From positions 15,252,001 to 15,316,000 of the forward strand of contig NC_135254.1 of the NCBI RefSeq assembly GCF_964204865.1: DNA of 64,000 nt. The letters run 5' to 3'. The DNA is from Styela clava. Its lineage: Eukaryota. The position numbers and the translations under genes were made by a program. Every line of letters begins with the position of its first letter. The first letter of the stretch is position 1. Below, piece by piece: positions 17,372 to 26,269 of the stretch. A model generated the notes under the pieces. It saw nothing but the letters and a program-made list of their open reading frames with translations. It was not told the DNA's origin and made no database searches.

Positions 17372-17671
17372 ATGGCAGAAAGGAAGAAAAAGGAGAGCAT
17401 TTTAGACCTTTCAAAATATTTGGATCGACCTATAAGGGTTAAATTTCACGGCGGACGAGAGGCAACAGGAGTTTTGAAAGGATTTGACCCACTTTTAAAT
17501 CTTGTACTGGACAGTACCACAGAGTTTCTTCGGGATCCAGATGATCCATACAAACTCACAGAAGATACAAGACAGCTTGGACTGACTGTATGTCGAGGAA
17601 CAAATGTTGTTTTGATATGTCCACAGGATGGCATGGAAGCAATTCCCAATCCCTTTGTTCAACATGAGTGA
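17372..17671 (+). CDS. LSM7: U6 snRNA-associated Sm-like protein LSm7 (intronless CDS)
   Basis: KKKESILDLSKY.D..IRVKF.GGREA.GVLKGFDPLLNLVLD...TRQLGL.VCRGT.VVLICPQDGMEAIPNPF is near-identical to known LSm7. Confidence 0.97.
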   Translation: MAERKKKESILDLSKYLDRPIRVKFHGGREATGVLKGFDPLLNLVLDSTTEFLRDPDDPYKLTEDTRQLGLTVCRGTNVVLICPQDGMEAIPNPFVQHE

Positions 17672-18486: not shown

Positions 18487-21400
18487 ATGCTCATCAGCTC
18501 AGCAAGTAGCAAAAAAACAAAATCTATAAATCATGTTCTTGGAGAATCGAAATATATTCTGGCTCCTATGGTTGACCAGAGTGAGCTGGCATGGCGAATT
18601 TTAGCGAGAAAATATGGAGCACAATTATGTTTTACACCAATGTTTAATGCAAATGTAATATTAAAAGACTTAACATATCGCAAAAAGGTGAGACATATTT
18701 GATTTGTTTTATTAGCCGATGATAAACAATCAACTTTTAAAGTTTGCTGTATTTAGGTGTTGAAGGACCTTTCCTGTGAAGAAGACCGGCCATTGATAGT
18801 CCAATTTTGTGCAAATACCCCAGAACAGCTATTGGAAGCCGCAAAAATAGTTCAACCTTTCTGTGATGCAATTGATCTCAACCTTGGTTGTCCTCAACAC
18901 ATTGCAAGACGCGGTGAGTAGAAATTGATTTAATAGCAGGGTTAAATCAGGTTGAAGTTCACTGTCTGATTCAATGGCTGTAATTGTCAAAGACGTTTTT
19001 GTTTTCGGAAAAAAACTACATGTTTTGTAAAAAAATAGTCCTCGTTTACATTTTTATTTGCATTTTTTGTATCGAAAATAGCTTAATATAGCTCGATTTT
19101 ATTGTAATGTAATGACACTATAATTTAATCTTTATAATATATGTTTGCTTTTCATCGCAAAATCCTTCTTATCAAAAATTTTGCACAGTCGAAGCAACCT
19201 GTCATTGATTTTGAATGTGTAGGATATAGCTAAAACAGTAGATATATCCTATTTTTTCACCTTAACCAAACCAGCTAAATCCTTCTCAATCCCTTTTTCT
19301 AGATTCAATATTATTGCATATTCTATTTATATACAACAGGTCATTTTGGTGCGTTCTTACAAGACAGTTGGGAGTTGCTACACAAAATGATTTATGCTGC
19401 TAACGATGTGCTTGATATCCCGGTTACAGCAAAAATCAGAATCTTCCCAGAGGTCAGTGGAAATTGACAAAGCATGATTTAATTTAAAAAATTGTCAAAG
19501 TTCAAGCTAGTTTGCTTTTAATCTGTTAGCCTTGTGTTTGAGAAAAAGAATATCTACTTTAAGTGTCTGTGGTACGGTATGTAAGAGATTTTTAATATGA
19601 TTGCTATTCTCGCTGTTCACTCTGAACATTGTCCTGTACTATTAACTTGTGGCATGCGAGCATACAACAGTGGTTTTCAACCTTTTTGGTGGAGTGACAC
19701 CATGTAACATTTCAAAGACTTTAGGACCCCCTGTACAATAGTTCAATTGTCTAAATTGTACAGACTATGAATCTATATAAGAGCAAATCTAATAATCACA
19801 AAACAAAATGATCTCTAAAGTGTAGAAAATTTATTAGAAGTGTCGAGCATTCGGTTTTGTAAAATACGATTTTTTTAAACTATTTTGAATTCTCATGAAT
19901 TTCTTTGATACCGAAGGTGGAGAAAACTGTAGCTTATGCAAAAATGTTGGAATCTGCCGGATGTAGTATGTTATCAGTACATGGTAGAACTATTGAGCAG
20001 AAAGGAATAATGACTGGTTTGGCTGATTGGAATCAAGTGAAAGAAGTGAAGTAAGTTTTTATCTTTAGCTATGGATCTACAAAAGTAGTTTTCCTATCAA
20101 TTTCTCATTGGTTATACAATCAATCAAGATGAATTATGACACAAATTTTTTTCACAAATGTCATTCATACCCCAGATACTTTTCTAAATTGCAATTTATT
20201 TTCAAATATTCCAGGAAAAATTTACAAATTCCTGTGATATCAAATGGAAACATCCAAAATTTAGAAGACATACATCAATGTATTGAACAAACAGGAGTAG
20301 ATGGTGTTATGGTGGCGGAGTCCCATTTATCCAATCCTTGTATATTTATTGGTAAGTTCAGGCGTTTTTATGTTGTTCAATTTAATTCCAAGAATATAGT
20401 TCAATATTGACTTTTGAAAGATGTTATTCTCAATGTTCAGCAAGCAAATTTTAATCAGTTATATCGTATTTCTAACATTTCCTGTTAACGTGGTTTAAAT
20501 TTAAAGTAATATTTATTGCTATCGAGGTTTTTCATTCATCTATCAGACAAGAGTTGATGTGAAACTTTGAACGTTATTTGAACTAAAATTTTAGCATATG
20601 TTCATGCTCTAACTAGATTCATTTATGTTCATTTTTTCTTTTCGTTTACAGGAGAAAATCCTAGTGTGTATAAGATGACAAAAGAGTATCTTGCCCTTGT
20701 TCGGATCCATCAATGTCCCATCAGTTTTGTGAGATCCCATCTTTTCAAGCTATGGGTTCATACTTTGAAAGTAACATTTATATATCTGTATTATCTTATG
20801 TGGAATACCTTTATATTCTGCCTCAAACAATTTGGTCTGTAAAGTTGTATCGACTTCCTTATTGCATCCACTCAAAAACTGTGAATAAAACTTGACTATA
20901 TTTGTGATTGTAAATTTTTGATGGTAGAAATATTTTCATTTGAACATTTGTCATATATAACATTTGATATCTGATTCTTTGACAAAAATTTGACTTTGAC
21001 CGAAATTAGAAAATCATTTGAAATAAATAATGGGTATTTTAACCAATTTTGTTATTAAAATCAGTTTCTATGAATACTAAATGATCTGTGCATCCTTCGT
21101 TGAATATGACCCAATTTTGGAAATTTTCTAAATTAAAAATATTTAGGATGTATTTGGCATAGTATATGATTCTGCTTCAGTCATGTCATGATATGTGACA
21201 TTTTTAACTTCATTTTAAAACTTTTTTCTACAGGTCTATCCCGACTTCCAATTAGCACTCGGTAGGGCACAAAATCTTGATGACATGGAAAATATAAATG
21301 ATGAGATCAACCAAGCTTGTCAGGTTTGTATTAATTCACAATTTGTTCAGACGTTCACGTAAGAAAAAACTGAAAATGTTCAATATCATTCACCTTAAAT

Positions 21401-21882
21401 GAATTCATTTTAATTTCCAAATTTTTTTATAACTTTAATTTTCAATATAGGAGGATGATGAAGCTTGTCCAATCACTGTAAATGGTTTTCCTCACTATGT
21501 TTGTCAACCTTATGTAAGGTAGGTATTACTTTTATGTCAGATATATGTATCATCCTTACCTGATACATTGCTTATTATTATTGCTTGGGGGATTCATGGT
21601 CACAATGTCAGGGGCTGATAGAGTTGATACAATATTTTTCTGGTTAACTGGTTAATGTTTCAATCTCACAACAATGCCATTATGTCAATTATTGCTGTGA
21701 GATTATTTGGAAAAATCTGCAGAATCTGTGAAATACCATTGCACAACTCAGATCTTTGATCAAACACTTTTTGCTTTTACATTTTTTCTCTGTTTTAAAA
21801 CTACCGGTATGTTATTTTTAGAACTCGAAAGCATAAAGAAGAACAAGATGAAAGTGAAAATAAAACTGAAAGAGAGTTGTCT
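18487..21882 (+). CDS. DUS1L: tRNA-dihydrouridine(16/17) synthase DUS1-like moiety (exons 1-9 of a probable DUS1L-TRMT10B fusion)
   Basis: Exons 18487-18687, 18757-18913, 19340-19452, 19917-20050, 20215-20351, 20652-20770, 21234-21323, 21451-21518, 21822-21882, all GT-AG and phase-consistent. Motifs [48 protein letters not shown]. Confidence 0.93.
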
Positions 21883-21944
21883 GTGAGTATGGTTTCTGGC
21901 TTATGTAGTTCTTCTAAGACAATCGTAATACTTTTGTATACTAG

Positions 21945-22148
21945 ATTGGGAACAAAACTCCGTTTATGCTTACTGTAGCGATTCTCAAAGCCAGGAATTA
22001 TCCATATCAGCTTCCAAGAAGTTCCGCTCCAGATATCGACATGGAAGCTCTGTGTGAACCAGTATCCAATGAAAATTCTCGTAACAAAAAAACAGAATAC
22101 ACACGTTGCTCTTTCAGTGGTCCTATTCCTATCTTTTCCTCTATCTAG
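21945..22148 (+). CDS. Candidate alternative terminal exon giving a DUS1L-only isoform
   Basis: AG acceptor at 21943-21944 (62-nt intron), in phase with exon 9, open for 67 codons to TAG. AATAAA at 22318-22323. The peptide has no recognisable homology. Confidence 0.35.
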   Translation: MGNKTPFMLTVAILKARNYPYQLPRSSAPDIDMEALCEPVSNENSRNKKTEYTRCSFSGPIPIFSSI

Positions 22149-22366
22149 AAGTCATTGCAAATTTAGGCTTGCAACCTTGCTATAAGTATCCATATTCAAT
22201 ATATAATTTTATGATAGAGATATTTGCTATTTTCACTCTTGTTCGGGGGATACTTTGCCTATTTTCACTTTCATTCTACTTTTCAGGATATTAATATTTG
22301 AAATTGCATTATTGCGCAATAAACCTATGGCTGGATTATTCTCTTGATTATATTAACTTTTAACAG

Positions 22367-25300
22367 CGTAATCAGCAAAGACGTCTTTTACGTTATCAGC
22401 GTAAAGTTGAAACATTAAAGTTTAAACGAAAATCTGAAAGGGAACGCAGAAAGGAAAAAAGAGCAGTAGAAAAGGTTTGAATTTTAACAATAACGCCAAC
22501 TTTTTAACGTTTTGAATAACAATTACACGTTGACCTATAGACCTGCATGACGACATATATGTATTGAAGATGCAGATATAATGGCAATCATAAGGTGAAG
22601 CATGAAGCAAGCTGGGCAGTCAATGGTACTTGAAATGGGTTAGGGATAGACGGAAAAATCCAGCTACCTATGTCACCTACTCCATCATACTGACTTTTTT
22701 GTTCAGTCATGAACTATTGTTTAATTTTTACAGCTCAATGACTTAACCCTGGAATCATGTCCATCACCAAGAACGCATTCTACAAGTAAACTTGCTAAAT
22801 CATTAATAAACTGTCGATTAAAAGAAGCTATGCAATGTATTGATTCTCTTAAAGTTTGTGTTGATCTGTCGTGGACTAATAGTATGAATAACAAGGTAGT
22901 TTTAATAGTTGTTTCATCACACTTTTATAATTCAAAAACGTTTTGGATTGTTGTTTATTTTTTCATTTTGGATCAAATTTGTGAACATCGTGAACAACCA
23001 ACTGTGCTTTCTGGGTATGTTAATCTATGCAGATTCTTCATGATTTTTTGAAGAACAGATTTCAGTGTAATCCAAATATCTTGTGAATGGGAGGAAAATT
23101 TAATATTGTGACACCCTAACTCTTGCTCAGAGAAAACAAAGCCAAGTTTCTCAAGTTGAGGAATTTATATAAATATTTAATGTTTGAGATTTATGAATTT
23201 TTTTCCCTTGGATAATCCGAATTCTCTGTCACTTATTTACTATTTGTAAATTATATCATTTCTGTACAGGAAGTATCAAAGTTAGCAGGTCAAATAGGAA
23301 GGTTATATGGATCTAACAGAAAAGCATCTTCTCCTGCTTCTTTGTATTTTACTGGTTTGTTTCATTTTCTCTATTTCAACTGTGCATTTTTTTAAATTCT
23401 GTCCCCTAAAAATACAGTACTAAAACTTTTATCATTGCAATTTGTGTTAAGTTGCCTGTAACTGTGAAAACTGAACGTTGTTTTTATAAAATCAGTGCTT
23501 CAAAATTTATCCTGTATTGGGACTGCGGCCCAATTTAAATACTGCACTCCCAACTCCGTGGCAACAAAATTTTGATAAGCTGAACTTTGGCGTGCTCATG
23601 CCTTTTTTAATTGAGAATACTTATTCAACTTGATGTTTTTTGAGTTTTTTTTTTAAAAAATTTTACGTTGATTGTAACCATGATAATTATCAGCATTAGG
23701 TCTTAAATTCAGTCTCTCGACTATTAGAATTCAAATTTCGACTCTCATTTCCTGGGAGTTTGAAATGTGACTATGGCCCAGATTCCAACAACAATAAAAA
23801 CATGCAATCTTTAAACTCTGACTCCATAACCCTGTTGAAAATGCTAAGGAATATTTGTGTTTGCTGTAATTTTGAATGGCTGTTCATACAAACATTTGAA
23901 TTGTTGACATCTGCTGTAAATATTCACATGTAGTAACTTCATCCCTTTGCATAATATCCATGTTGTAATCATGCTAATTTCAAAGTCTAGTATCCAAAGC
24001 ATTGTGGAAATAAAGGTTTTCATGTATTGCAGTCAATTGCAAATAAATCTGTCTTCATAATTTTGATTTCAAGAGAACGGAATTTAAGAGAAATTTGAAA
24101 TCAAATGTCTTTCAAAGTATTTGTGCATTTATATGAGTTAAATGCAATTAATATTTCTTTTTAGCTGAAAATGTTTCCAGTATAAGAAGAAAACAATATT
24201 TTTGTTTGAATTTCCAGGTTTTTCTTCGGATTCCCACCTGTATCAGGAATGTACTCGAAAACACAATGGATTTGAGAATTATAAAATAACTGTGACAGAA
24301 AATAGTTTTTTATCTTTGTTTGATAAAGAAAATCTTATCTATTTATCACCGGATGCAGAGATAGGTAAGATGTTATGAATGAAGATTTTGATTTAGTAGA
24401 TCACTGCTTAAGTACTTTTGGCACCTCCTCGAATTGAAAAATATTTCTTACTCAAGATTTCAGGTGTTCTTTTAATTGTCTTTTGAAAATGCCTTGTTGT
24501 CTTAATTCTGAGGTATTGTCAGAAATTTTGATTTCGATCAACACCATTAAAAGTTTGTAATTCCGACTGACATTTCTGGGAAATTCAGAATTTTGACTGC
24601 AAAGAGTTTTCGATGTTGTTGAAAACATACCAAACTCCTTAAGTACACAAGCCCTGTTCCAGCAATGTTAATGAACAATGAAGTACATTGCTGTATTTCA
24701 ATGCAAAACACTATGAAACTCCATATCAGTAGTTTTCAACCTTTATTGTGGAACGATAGAAAATTTCTTTAGGCTCTGGAAACCCCTGTGAAATTGATTG
24801 TAATTGTCATTATAAAATATGTCACGGAACACGAAACAGTTATTATTTGTTCATTAGAACCGTGTATTAGAGTATATTTGTTCAATATACATAGAATAAT
24901 AATATAGACTCTCGTATTCAAGTGTAACCTTGCGCAACCCCTGGACTGCGCTGCCGGAACCCTGAACGGCACCCTGGTTGAAAACCAATGCTCCCTTTAT
25001 ATCATAGATTAAAAGTTCAATAAATGATGTGATGTAGTTGCCAAGAATTATAATTTTTTTCATTCTCCAAATGTTTAAAATTACAGAATTAGACGCTGTC
25101 GATGCATCTCATATTTATATACTCGGTGGATTAGTTGATGAAACTGTCCGCAAACAACTGACCAATGATCGAGCTTCTGAAATAAGAATATCTTGTCGAC
25201 GTCTTCCCATACATACATATATGCACCGATCTGGTCACCATCACAGTTATTCAACTGTGCTTGCTATCAATCAAGGTATGGGAAAAAGAAATGTTTGCAT

Positions 25301-26269
25301 TTCTGACGCTAAGATATTTATTTGCTTGCTTCAATGGTGTGTTCGTTACTGATCAAAATCTATATGGTACTATCGTAGATTCGTAGTATGTGTACCAGGT
25401 TAGGGTTAGTTAGGCCATAATTTTATTCCGATTTTCCTCATTTTAGTTCTATTAAGAGTTTGGGGACTGTCTGTGTTAGCCAAGTGAAAATCCCCCTGGT
25501 CATAGGTTTCAGTCCATTTGCACAAATTGATGTAAAGTAGGCGAGCACAATTAGTTACCTTCATATTGATACACACAAGGGGGTTTGTGTTTTTACTTTT
25601 CCAGCTCGTTTCGTTATGTATATTGTTTCTGACAATAGATTCCAAACCATTGTTTATGAGTAGGACACTTTATATTAAGTCCATACTATTTCTGTGAAAA
25701 GTCATTTTTAGTATGTTTCTTAAACCAAATGTATGTTTTTTTTTTGAACAAAACACAAATGTTTTTTTTATTTATATACTAATATTTAGTTGCTCTAAAT
25801 GTACTTGTCGCTCAAGAAAGAATATCTATACTCAAATACTTATTCAACCTAATACATATATACTGGTATATGTTATAATAATAAGGGCTTCCGAAGTATG
25901 CGAACCAAGATAGCGGACATCGGAACGTAACAGGTTAGGGTTAGGCGATAATTTTTTTCCAATTTTCCTTATTTTAGTCCTATTATCAGTTCGGAGACTA
26001 GCCAAGAGCCTCCCGTAGTAATTATACCTAAAATTATGGCCTAACCCTAGTACCCATATTACATTGCGATGTCCGCCATCTTGGTTCGCATACTTCGGGA
26101 GCACCTAATAATATCTATATTAACAGCGATGGGGATTCCTTCTAATGCCACGTTTTATTTAGTATTCGACATCTTGTTGTCCTACTATTGCACTAAGAAT
26201 TGGAGAGAAGCGTTGATGAAAGGAATGCCTCCAAGAAAAGGATTTTTAATAAATGAGGATGTTAGCTGA
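22367..26269 (+). CDS. TRMT10B: tRNA methyltransferase 10 homolog B moiety (exons 10-15 of the probable fusion)
   Basis: Exons 22367-22474, 22734-22895, 23270-23354, 24218-24364, 25087-25275, 26163-26269. Motifs VCVDLS, SKLAGQIGRLYGSNRKA, YLSPDA, YILGGLVDE, RLPI..YM, LAINQVFDIL, NWREAL.KG...KG match TRMT10B. Confidence 0.93.
24727..24990. mobile_element. hAT-like MITE in an intron
   Basis: TIRs CAGTAGTTTTCAACC / GGTTGAAAACCAATG. Confidence 0.65.
25885..26105. mobile_element. Palindromic MITE (PIF/Harbinger-like; TAA on both flanks)
   Basis: Long TIR (GGTGCTCCCGAAGTATGCGAACCAAGATGGCGGACATC consensus) with internal GGTTAGGGTTAGG/CCTAACCCTA. Related copies at 46100, 54353, 6464, 1634 and 25366. 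Confidence 0.75.

What the first reader, a model, noticed from the sequence alone, without database searches (positions are those of the whole stretch)
18487..26269. Predicted DUS1L-TRMT10B fusion: one polypeptide with two tRNA-modifying enzymes
Seen: 15 GT-AG exons sum to 1878 nt (625 aa plus stop), with every phase matching and no stop between the DUS catalytic domain and the SPOUT methyltransferase. Exon 9 (…ERELS) joins exon 10 (RNQQRRLLRYQRKVETLKFKRKSERERRKEKR) to rebuild an LS-R/K-NQQ-R/K motif that resembles both the DUS1L linker and the basic TRMT10 N-terminus, a plausible fusion seam. The Cys-rich C-terminal tail of vertebrate DUS1L is absent. Exons 10-11 have no in-frame AUG until MQCID, downstream of TRMT10B-conserved residues. 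Known: Dus1 makes D16/D17 and TRMT10B methylates N1 of purine 9 (m1A9 in human). These are neighbouring sites around the D-arm and are normally handled by separate genes. Inference: a bifunctional enzyme that could couple the two modifications. I do not know of a described example.
Basis: partly seen in the sequence, partly recalled or inferred. Interest (0 to 1): 0.9.

Follow-up and report, generated by a model that had tools for sequence, protein, structure and literature searches.

The report
Fused dihydrouridine synthase–TRMT10B tRNA enzyme gene
This sea-squirt (Styela clava) gene most likely encodes one 625-residue protein joining two different tRNA-modifying enzymes, and the same fusion, which I could not find described in any paper, also turns up in other sea squirts, spiders, worms, a sea anemone and choanoflagellates.

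Summary
Fifteen GT-AG exons (18487-26269, + strand) give an open 1878-nt frame. Exons 1-5 hit Pfam Dus and exons 12-14 hit the TRM10 methyltransferase domain.

The fusion therefore rests on comparison.
- A 622-aa ORF on a 2.8-kb public contig (P0224, a related ascidian) matches 13 of the 15 exons by tblastn at 56-87% identity, and exon 9 in alignment. It has the same start and runs unbroken across both disputed junctions.
- Ciona, Phallusia, a nemertean, an annelid, spiders, a scorpion, a sea spider, Actinia and two choanoflagellates carry predicted proteins with the same Dus + TRM10 architecture.
- Further uninterrupted ORFs of this kind lie on short ENA, JGI and Logan contigs.

The S. clava genome also holds a separate, intronless, canonical DUS1L with the Cys-rich tail, plus TRMT10A-like and TRMT10C-like genes. 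Its only TRMT10B-like exons are the ones in this window. Catalytic motifs of both halves are intact.

Six full-text literature searches found no description of this architecture. Verdict: a real fusion gene (confidence 0.8), a member of a widespread but apparently undescribed bifunctional family. Direct RNA proof in S. clava is still missing.

The parts
18487..18687 (+). Exon 1: start codon and first beta-strands of the Dus TIM barrel
   Evidence: Pfam Dus positions 1-43, E 1.5e-7. It has the same M-L-I-S-S start as P0224. Exons 1 and 2 together are 74.6% identical to P0224.
18757..18913 (+). Exon 2: Dus, carries the NLGCPQ motif with the catalytic Cys
   Evidence: Pfam Dus positions 49-94, E 1.1e-13. 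Motif read directly from the translation and conserved across fused homologues.
19340..19452 (+). Exon 3: Dus, AKIRI motif
   Evidence: Pfam Dus positions 98-132. 66% identical to P0224.
19917..20050 (+). Exon 4: Dus, VHGRT motif
   Evidence: Pfam Dus positions 138-179. 82% identical to P0224.
20215..20351 (+). Exon 5: Dus, SNGNI motif
   Evidence: Pfam Dus positions 182-224, E 1.4e-13. 75% identical to P0224.
20652..20770 (+). Exon 6: start of the Dus helical domain
   Evidence: 81% identical to P0224 residues 244-286.
21234..21323 (+). Exon 7: Dus helical domain
   Evidence: 56% identical to P0224 residues 284-315.
21451..21518 (+). Exon 8: end of the Dus domain ([10 protein letters not shown])
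   Evidence: 65% identical to P0224 residues 315-337. The motif is shared with canonical DUS1L from L003.
21822..21882 (+). Exon 9: acidic linker ending in ...ERELS
   Evidence: Aligns without any length change to P0224 'KQNSEEDLDEKKSEREIS'. The equivalent part of the P0224 model is disordered, residues 338-356.
22367..22474 (+). Exon 10: basic Lys/Arg-rich segment (RNQQRRLLRYQRK...), the N-terminal region typical of TRMT10B
   Evidence: 86% identical to P0224 in the alignment. No ATG in any frame. Predicted as one long helix, residues 358-394. The same motif occurs in unfused vertebrate TRMT10B.
22734..22895 (+). Exon 11: pre-SPOUT helix and first strand of the TRM10 domain
   Evidence: 71% identical to P0224 residues 393-447. 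First in-frame ATG at 22830.
23270..23354 (+). Exon 12: TRM10 domain (GRLYGSNR)
   Evidence: Pfam tRNA_m1G_MT positions 9-35. 74% identical to P0224.
24218..24364 (+). Exon 13: TRM10 domain
   Evidence: Pfam tRNA_m1G_MT positions 38-92, E 9.6e-5. 80% identical to P0224.
25087..25275 (+). Exon 14: TRM10 domain with the GGLVDE catalytic Asp
   Evidence: Pfam positions 98-162. Aligns to yeast Trm10 residues 198-244, with the Asp opposite D210. 87% identical to P0224.
26163..26269 (+). Exon 15: C-terminal helices of the TRM10 domain and the stop codon
   Evidence: 82% identical to P0224 residues 588-620. TGA at 26267-26269.

Best explanation
The window (Styela clava, contig C5) carries a single 15-exon gene whose mRNA encodes a 625-residue two-enzyme protein. 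The N-terminal ~340 residues form a DUS1-type FMN-dependent tRNA dihydrouridine synthase (TIM barrel plus helical domain). Next come a ~20-residue acidic disordered stretch (exon 9) and a ~40-residue basic helix (exon 10). That helix is the tRNA-binding N-terminal region typical of TRMT10B. The C-terminal ~215 residues are a TRM10-type SPOUT methyltransferase orthologous to TRMT10B. Shown here: the open frame, both domain identities, intact catalytic motifs, collinearity with continuous fused ORFs in relatives, and the absence of any other TRMT10B-like exons in the genome. Inferred: the protein reduces U16/U17 and methylates N1 of purine 9 on the same tRNA, two sites that lie close together around the D-arm. 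The Dus half would then also dock the methyltransferase on its substrate. A separate canonical DUS1L (L003) probably does the bulk D16/17 work.
For: The exon model is open and phase-consistent. Pfam Dus hits exons 1-5 and tRNA_m1G_MT hits exons 12-14. P0224, a 622-aa ORF on a 2823-nt Logan contig, matches 13 of the 15 exons by tblastn at 56-87% identity and exon 9 in alignment. It has the same start and is continuous across ...EREIS|RNQQRRLL... and ...GEK|LRDF... with no inserted residues. Fused Dus+TRM10 proteins exist in Ciona (XP_002130384.2), Phallusia (CAB3240110.1), Tubulanus, Lamellibrachia, seven spiders, a scorpion, Nymphon, Actinia and the choanoflagellates Barroeca and UC4. Uninterrupted ORFs of the same kind lie on short ENA, JGI and Logan contigs. 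In the S. clava genome, TRMT10B-like exons occur only in this window; the other TRM10 loci are TRMT10C-like (C3) and TRMT10A-like (C4). Exon 10 has no ATG, and it is the best-conserved of the seam exons 8-11 aligned (86%), so it is translated from upstream. The motifs NLGCPQ, KIR, HGR, NGN and GGLVD are kept. An AF2 model of P0224 gives two confident domains, and Foldseek matches them to Dus2/Dus structures and to Trm10/TRMT10C structures.
Against: No S. clava protein with this architecture appeared in the protein searches, so a public fused model for this species was not seen. Gene models of close relatives disagree. Ensembl-derived Ciona entries are split, and the TRMT10B fragment starts exactly at the exon-10-equivalent boundary without a Met. 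Ridgeia has an unfused model next to the fused Lamellibrachia one. Ascidians use spliced-leader trans-splicing (my own knowledge), so extra TRMT10B-only mRNAs cannot be excluded. That P0224 comes from a transcript is inferred from the contig length, not seen directly.
Confidence: 0.8

Rival explanations
1. There are two separate cistrons, and the fused frame is never translated. The DUS1-like mRNA would end inside intron 9 (stop at 21976-78, AATAAA at 22318). TRMT10B would be made from its own mRNA, created by spliced-leader trans-splicing at the acceptor 22366/22367 or 22733/22734, as in an operon.
For: The genes are co-oriented, and other first-stage notes report many candidate trans-spliced operons in this genome. 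An AATAAA lies 45 nt before the exon-10 acceptor. The Ciona Ensembl fragment F6SV73 starts at the same exon boundary.
Against: Exon 10 has no ATG, and the first in-frame ATG (22830) lies beyond the conserved basic region, which is 86% identical to P0224. The ascidian spliced leader supplies no AUG (my own knowledge). AATAAA occurs at background frequency, 1.2 per kb of intron. Continuous fused ORFs exist in a related ascidian and in Ciona and Phallusia. The frame and length of the exon 9-10 seam are preserved between species.
Confidence: 0.07
2. The fused mRNA is the main product, but the locus also yields shorter isoforms. One would be a TRMT10B-only protein starting at Met 22830, made from a trans-spliced or internally initiated mRNA. 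Another would be a Dus-only protein made by retaining intron 8, 9 or 10.
For: Read-through after exons 8, 9 and 10 meets a stop within 1, 31 and 1 codons. Split Ciona models exist. Trans-splicing is common in ascidians (my own knowledge).
Against: Nothing in the sequence requires such isoforms. A protein starting at 22830 would lack the conserved basic N-terminal region that Trm10 enzymes use to bind tRNA (review PMC9508554).
Confidence: 0.3
3. The fusion protein is real, but the Dus half serves mainly as a tRNA D-arm docking module for TRMT10B rather than as a second catalyst.
For: In the fused proteins of Actinia and Barroeca the Dus catalytic motifs (NLGCPQ, HGR, NGN) are lost while the TRM10 motifs are kept. 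S. clava retains a separate canonical DUS1L.
Against: In S. clava, the other tunicates, Tubulanus, Lamellibrachia and the chelicerates all Dus catalytic motifs are intact.
Confidence: 0.2

Closest known systems
DUS1L / yeast Dus1 (tRNA-dihydrouridine(16/17) synthase, Pfam PF01207)
   Same: It has a full Dus catalytic and helical domain with all the motifs. Its homologue P0224 is 53% identical to the canonical S. clava DUS1L, against 38% and 29% to other Dus paralogues. It also shares the PHxVCQPYVR ending and a following LSK-type basic motif.
   Different: It lacks the Cys-rich C-terminal tail, which is present in the intronless paralogue L003. It continues instead into a TRM10 methyltransferase.
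TRMT10B (vertebrate tRNA m1A9 methyltransferase, TRM10-type SPOUT)
   Same: It has the basic N-terminal motif (S-K/R-N-x-x-R-K...KRK), the TRM10 domain and the GGLVDE catalytic Asp. It groups with vertebrate TRMT10B from Solea, Electrophorus, Monodelphis and Phalacrocorax in the TRM10 tree.
   Different: It has no start codon of its own. The roughly 40-100 variable residues that precede the basic motif in stand-alone TRMT10B are replaced by a whole Dus enzyme.
Predicted Dus-TRM10 proteins already in databases (for example Ciona XP_002130384.2, Phallusia A0A6F9DAQ5, Tubulanus XP_074654537.1, Actinia A0A6P8I3S0)
   Same: They have the same domain order, the same seam motif and similar length, 581-800 aa.
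   Different: They are automatic predictions, named after one half only. No functional or evolutionary description was found.
TRMT10C (MRPP1) with SDR5C1
   Same: This is another TRM10 paralogue whose activity depends on a second, unrelated partner enzyme.
   Different: There the partner is a separate polypeptide and the complex is mitochondrial. The TRMT10C-like gene of S. clava is a different, intronless locus (L001).

Membership tests
Dus family, DUS1 subfamily | Dus catalytic domain (Pfam PF01207) above the curated cut-off | tested here: met
   Exons 1-5 each score 25.8-51.4 bits against a cut-off of 20.4, at consecutive profile positions 1-224.
Dus family, DUS1 subfamily | Catalytic Cys in N-L-G-C-P-Q, plus the K-I-R, H-G-R and N-G-N motifs that bind FMN and substrate | tested here: met
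   Read directly in exons 2-5. Conserved in fused homologues and in canonical DUS1L.
Dus family, DUS1 subfamily | Closer to DUS1L than to DUS2, DUS3 or DUS4 | tested here: met
   The homologue P0224 is 53% identical to the canonical DUS1L locus on C6, against 38% (C18) and 29% (C6:8.6 Mb). The tunicate fused Dus domains sit with the canonical DUS1L clade, SH-aLRT 97.
Dus family, DUS1 subfamily | Cys-rich C-terminal tail of canonical metazoan DUS1L | tested here: not met
   No Cys-rich stretch resembling the DUS1L tail was found on the + strand between 21500 and 40000. The tail is present in the paralogue L003.
Dus family, DUS1 subfamily | Formation of D16/D17 in tRNA | not testable with these tools
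   This needs an enzyme assay or tRNA sequencing.
TRM10 / TRMT10B | TRM10-type SPOUT domain | tested here: met
   Exons 12-14 hit PF01746 in order (15-22.6 bits each, individually under the 27.3 cut-off). Exon 14 hits yeast, S. pombe and human Trm10 structures. The orthologue P0224 scores 328 bits on a TRM10 profile built here from fused proteins, P0224 included. Its model matches Trm10/TRMT10C structures with target TM 0.85-0.89.
TRM10 / TRMT10B | Catalytic Asp equivalent to yeast Trm10 D210 | tested here: met
   The Asp of G-G-L-V-D in exon 14 aligns with D210 of chain 9xzq_B.
TRM10 / TRMT10B | Orthology to the B paralogue rather than A or C | tested here: inconclusive
   It groups with named vertebrate TRMT10B sequences, but in a weakly supported clade (SH-aLRT 85) of a quick tree. 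The genome has separate A-like (GGLVDHNKHK) and C-like genes. Sources name the Ciona and Actinia counterparts TRMT10B.
TRM10 / TRMT10B | Stand-alone gene with its own initiator Met | tested here: not met
   There is no ATG in exon 10, and the first in-frame ATG is at 22830, after the conserved basic region.
Spliced-leader trans-spliced operon (rival reading) | Downstream cistron has its own AUG soon after the trans-splice acceptor | tested here: not met
Spliced-leader trans-spliced operon (rival reading) | Spliced-leader-bearing reads at the acceptor, and polyadenylated upstream mRNA ending just before it | not testable with these tools
The AATAAA at 22318 is at background frequency.

The most novel reading that the evidence does not exclude
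The DUS1-like-TRMT10B fusion is ancient, predating animals, since it is present in two choanoflagellates, a cnidarian, spiralians, chelicerates and tunicates. It would then be the ancestral form of TRMT10B, with the stand-alone vertebrate TRMT10B arising by loss of the Dus half. The LSK-type basic motif shared by canonical DUS1L, the fused proteins and unfused TRMT10B would be a trace of that history. Functionally, the enzyme would couple D16/17 and m1R9 formation on one tRNA, or use the Dus fold to select TRMT10B's narrow substrate set.
Probability: 0.3. Interest if true: 0.8.

Novelty: new variant of a known kind. Interest (0 to 1): 0.65.

Why it matters
TRMT10B is the least understood of the three animal Trm10 paralogues. 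Human TRMT10B is slow, very selective (one A9 tRNA), and its evolutionary rationale is stated as open in PMC6800469. A natural covalent link to a DUS1-type enzyme in many invertebrates suggests a concrete hypothesis: TRMT10B works with, or is targeted by, a D-loop-binding Dus module. The hypothesis can be tested directly in a tractable chordate such as Ciona or Styela. The fusion also shows that TRMT10B-type enzymes are not confined to vertebrates. Finally, it gives annotators a rule for a locus that pipelines currently split or fuse inconsistently.

Tried and rejected
The public gene calls at this locus and the origin of contig P0224 could not be inspected.
- Joined model: the spliced model was never sent to any search tool. 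Exons were searched one by one by reference, and joined only inside one script to count length and stops.
- Exons 10 and 11 against PDB sequences: nothing useful.
- Bacterial promoter/terminator scan of the seam: irrelevant to a eukaryote.
- Word-based search with the TRM10 half of P0011: only close relatives found.
- A hidden Cys-rich DUS1L tail downstream, with TRMT10B nested in a DUS1L intron: no DUS1L-tail-like Cys-rich stretch was found.
- AATAAA in intron 9 as an operon signal: it occurs at background frequency.
- Single versus multiple origin of the fusion: unresolved. The best Dus tree puts the tunicate fused Dus domains with canonical DUS1L, but the AU test does not reject one fused clade (p = 0.063).
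Full report
**The observation.** I re-derived all 15 exons from the sequence. Every internal boundary is AG|exon|GT and the phases chain. The total is 1878 nt with no internal stop. The ATG is at 18487 and the TGA at 26267-26269. Introns are 69-887 nt, and the disputed intron 9 (21883-22366, 484 nt) is unremarkable. Searched one at a time by reference, exons 1-5 each exceed the Pfam Dus cut-off at consecutive profile positions. Exons 12-14 hit tRNA_m1G_MT at consecutive positions. Exon 14 aligns to yeast Trm10 with its GGLVD Asp opposite D210. Exon 10 has no ATG in any frame, and the first in-frame ATG of exon 11 is at 22830. No Cys-rich stretch resembling the DUS1L tail lies on the + strand downstream.

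**Organism and paralogues.** An intronless ORF elsewhere in the same assembly (L003, contig C6) is 100% identical to the NCBI protein 'tRNA-dihydrouridine(16/17) synthase-like [Styela clava]'. The genome is therefore the ascidian Styela clava.
- L003 is a canonical DUS1L with the Cys-rich tail. The window's gene is thus a second, DUS1-like copy.
- The genome also has an intronless TRMT10C-like gene (L001).
- It has a TRMT10A-like gene with the GGLVDHNKHK signature (L002).
- A whole-genome search with the related fused protein P0224 finds TRMT10B-like exons only in this window.

**RNA evidence.** The joined spliced model was not sent to any search tool. It was assembled only inside a script to count length and stops.

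**Comparative evidence.** A search of 1.8 billion representative proteins with exon 14 alone returned several long proteins whose match lay at the C-terminus. Pfam showed that they carry Dus plus tRNA_m1G_MT. I then built a profile from these proteins plus the individual window exons as separate rows. That search returned about twenty proteins with both domains. They come from:
- Ciona intestinalis (XP_002130384.2) and Phallusia mammillata;
- the nemertean Tubulanus and the annelid Lamellibrachia;
- seven spiders, a scorpion and the sea spider Nymphon;
- the sea anemone Actinia;
- the choanoflagellates Barroeca and UC4;
- unnamed ORFs on short ENA, JGI and Logan contigs.

The closest of these is P0224, a 622-aa ORF on a 2823-nt Logan contig. 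By tblastn it matches 13 of the 15 window exons at 56-87% identity, and exon 9 aligns. It starts with the same M-L-I-S-S. It reads straight through both disputed junctions with no extra residues...SEREIS-RNQQRRLLRYQRKVETLK... and ...RSGEK-LRDFKLVPCPSPRTHSTS.... The S. clava gene carries 5.9 kb of introns. A 2.8-kb contig holding the whole ORF is therefore a spliced transcript or an intron-poor gene. Either way the frame is physically continuous in a relative. Exon 10 is the best-conserved of the seam exons 8-11 aligned (86%) and has no start codon, so it must be translated from upstream.

**Caveats from annotation.** Pipelines disagree at this locus in relatives. Ensembl-derived Ciona entries split the gene. 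Their TRMT10B fragment begins, without a Met, exactly at the exon-10-equivalent boundary. That shows the intron position is shared, but it could also reflect a separate mRNA. Ridgeia has an unfused model beside the fused model of its relative Lamellibrachia. No S. clava protein of this architecture surfaced in my searches. The AATAAA 45 nt upstream of exon 10 is at background frequency for these AT-rich introns.

**Structure and catalysis.** An AlphaFold2 model of P0224, built with an alignment of 15 fused proteins, has mean pLDDT 80 and pTM 0.55. In order it contains:
- a confident Dus TIM barrel plus helical domain;
- a disordered acidic stretch at residues 338-356, equivalent to exon 9;
- one long basic helix at residues 358-394, equivalent to exon 10;
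- a confident SPOUT domain.

Foldseek matches the two halves to Dus2/Dus/DusB/DusC structures and to Trm10/TRMT10A/TRMT10C structures. The motifs NLGCPQ, KIR, HGR, NGN, GRLYGSNR and GGLVD are intact in S. clava and in most fused homologues. Actinia and Barroeca have lost the Dus motifs, and UC4 has a degenerate TRM10 half. This pattern suggests that the Dus fold may also serve as a tRNA-docking module.

**Evolution.** In a Dus-domain tree the tunicate fused domains group with canonical DUS1L (SH-aLRT 97). The protostome and cnidarian fused domains fall outside that group. An AU test does not reject a single fused clade (p = 0.063). In a TRM10 tree the fused domains are interleaved with unfused TRMT10B of vertebrates and others, in a weakly resolved clade. 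An LSK-type basic motif sits at the seam in fused proteins. It also sits after the Dus domain in canonical DUS1L, and near the N-terminus of unfused TRMT10B. One ancient fusion with later losses and repeated fusions both remain possible.

**Literature.** Six full-text searches found no description of a Dus-Trm10 fusion. Neither did targeted reading of the Dus evolution paper (PMC3674756), the SPOUT review (PMC9508554) and the two TRMT10A/B papers (PMC7293042, PMC6800469). PMC6800469 treats TRMT10B as conserved in vertebrates and states that its evolutionary basis is open.

**Verdict.** It is not unique to this genome. It is one member of a widespread family that is present in databases but apparently undescribed. 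The missing piece is direct RNA or protein evidence in S. clava. Additional shorter isoforms cannot be excluded.

Noticed in passing
window 17372-17671 (+): An intronless 99-codon ORF lies 816 nt upstream of the fusion gene on the same strand. Another first-stage note (s1-808010) reads it as LSM7 and the whole cluster as operon-like. I did not verify the LSM7 identity.
   Followed up: partly
L003 (G000:C6:1921778-1923175), L001 (C3), L004 (C6:8.6 Mb): The canonical DUS1L (with Cys-rich tail), the TRMT10C-like gene and a 611-aa Dus paralogue are all single-exon ORFs in this genome. The fused gene, by contrast, has 14 introns. This could reflect retrogene replacement of housekeeping genes.
   Followed up: partly
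window 25875-26114 (intron 14): An inverted repeat has 56-nt arms, 86% complementary, 128 nt apart, and looks like a MITE. By eye, a similar internal sequence (ggttagggttag...) recurs at about 25398-25470.
   Followed up: partly
window 19668-19693 and 24727-24752 (introns 3 and 13): A 26-nt direct repeat (88% identical) looks like part of a dispersed repeat family.
   Followed up: no
proteins P0025, P0072, P0085: Other TRMT10B-like domains are fused in predicted proteins to different enzymes. P0025 has TRM10 + queuine tRNA-ribosyltransferase (600 aa) and groups with the rotifer Adineta. P0072 has TRM10 + pseudouridine synthase (597 aa). P0085 has a lysine methyltransferase + TRM10 (626 aa). 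These could be real or chimeric gene models.
   Followed up: no
proteins P0075 (Actinia), P0078 (Barroeca), P0241 (UC4): The fused proteins of Actinia and Barroeca have lost the Dus catalytic motifs but keep the TRM10 motifs. UC4 keeps the Dus motifs but has a degenerate TRM10 half.
   Followed up: partly
proteins P0306, P0307 (Ciona, UniRef H2XYU0 and F6SV73): The Ensembl-derived Ciona fragments of the fused gene break at exon boundaries shared with S. clava: after the exon-5 equivalent and before the exon-10 equivalent. The intron positions are therefore conserved between the two ascidian orders.
   Followed up: partly
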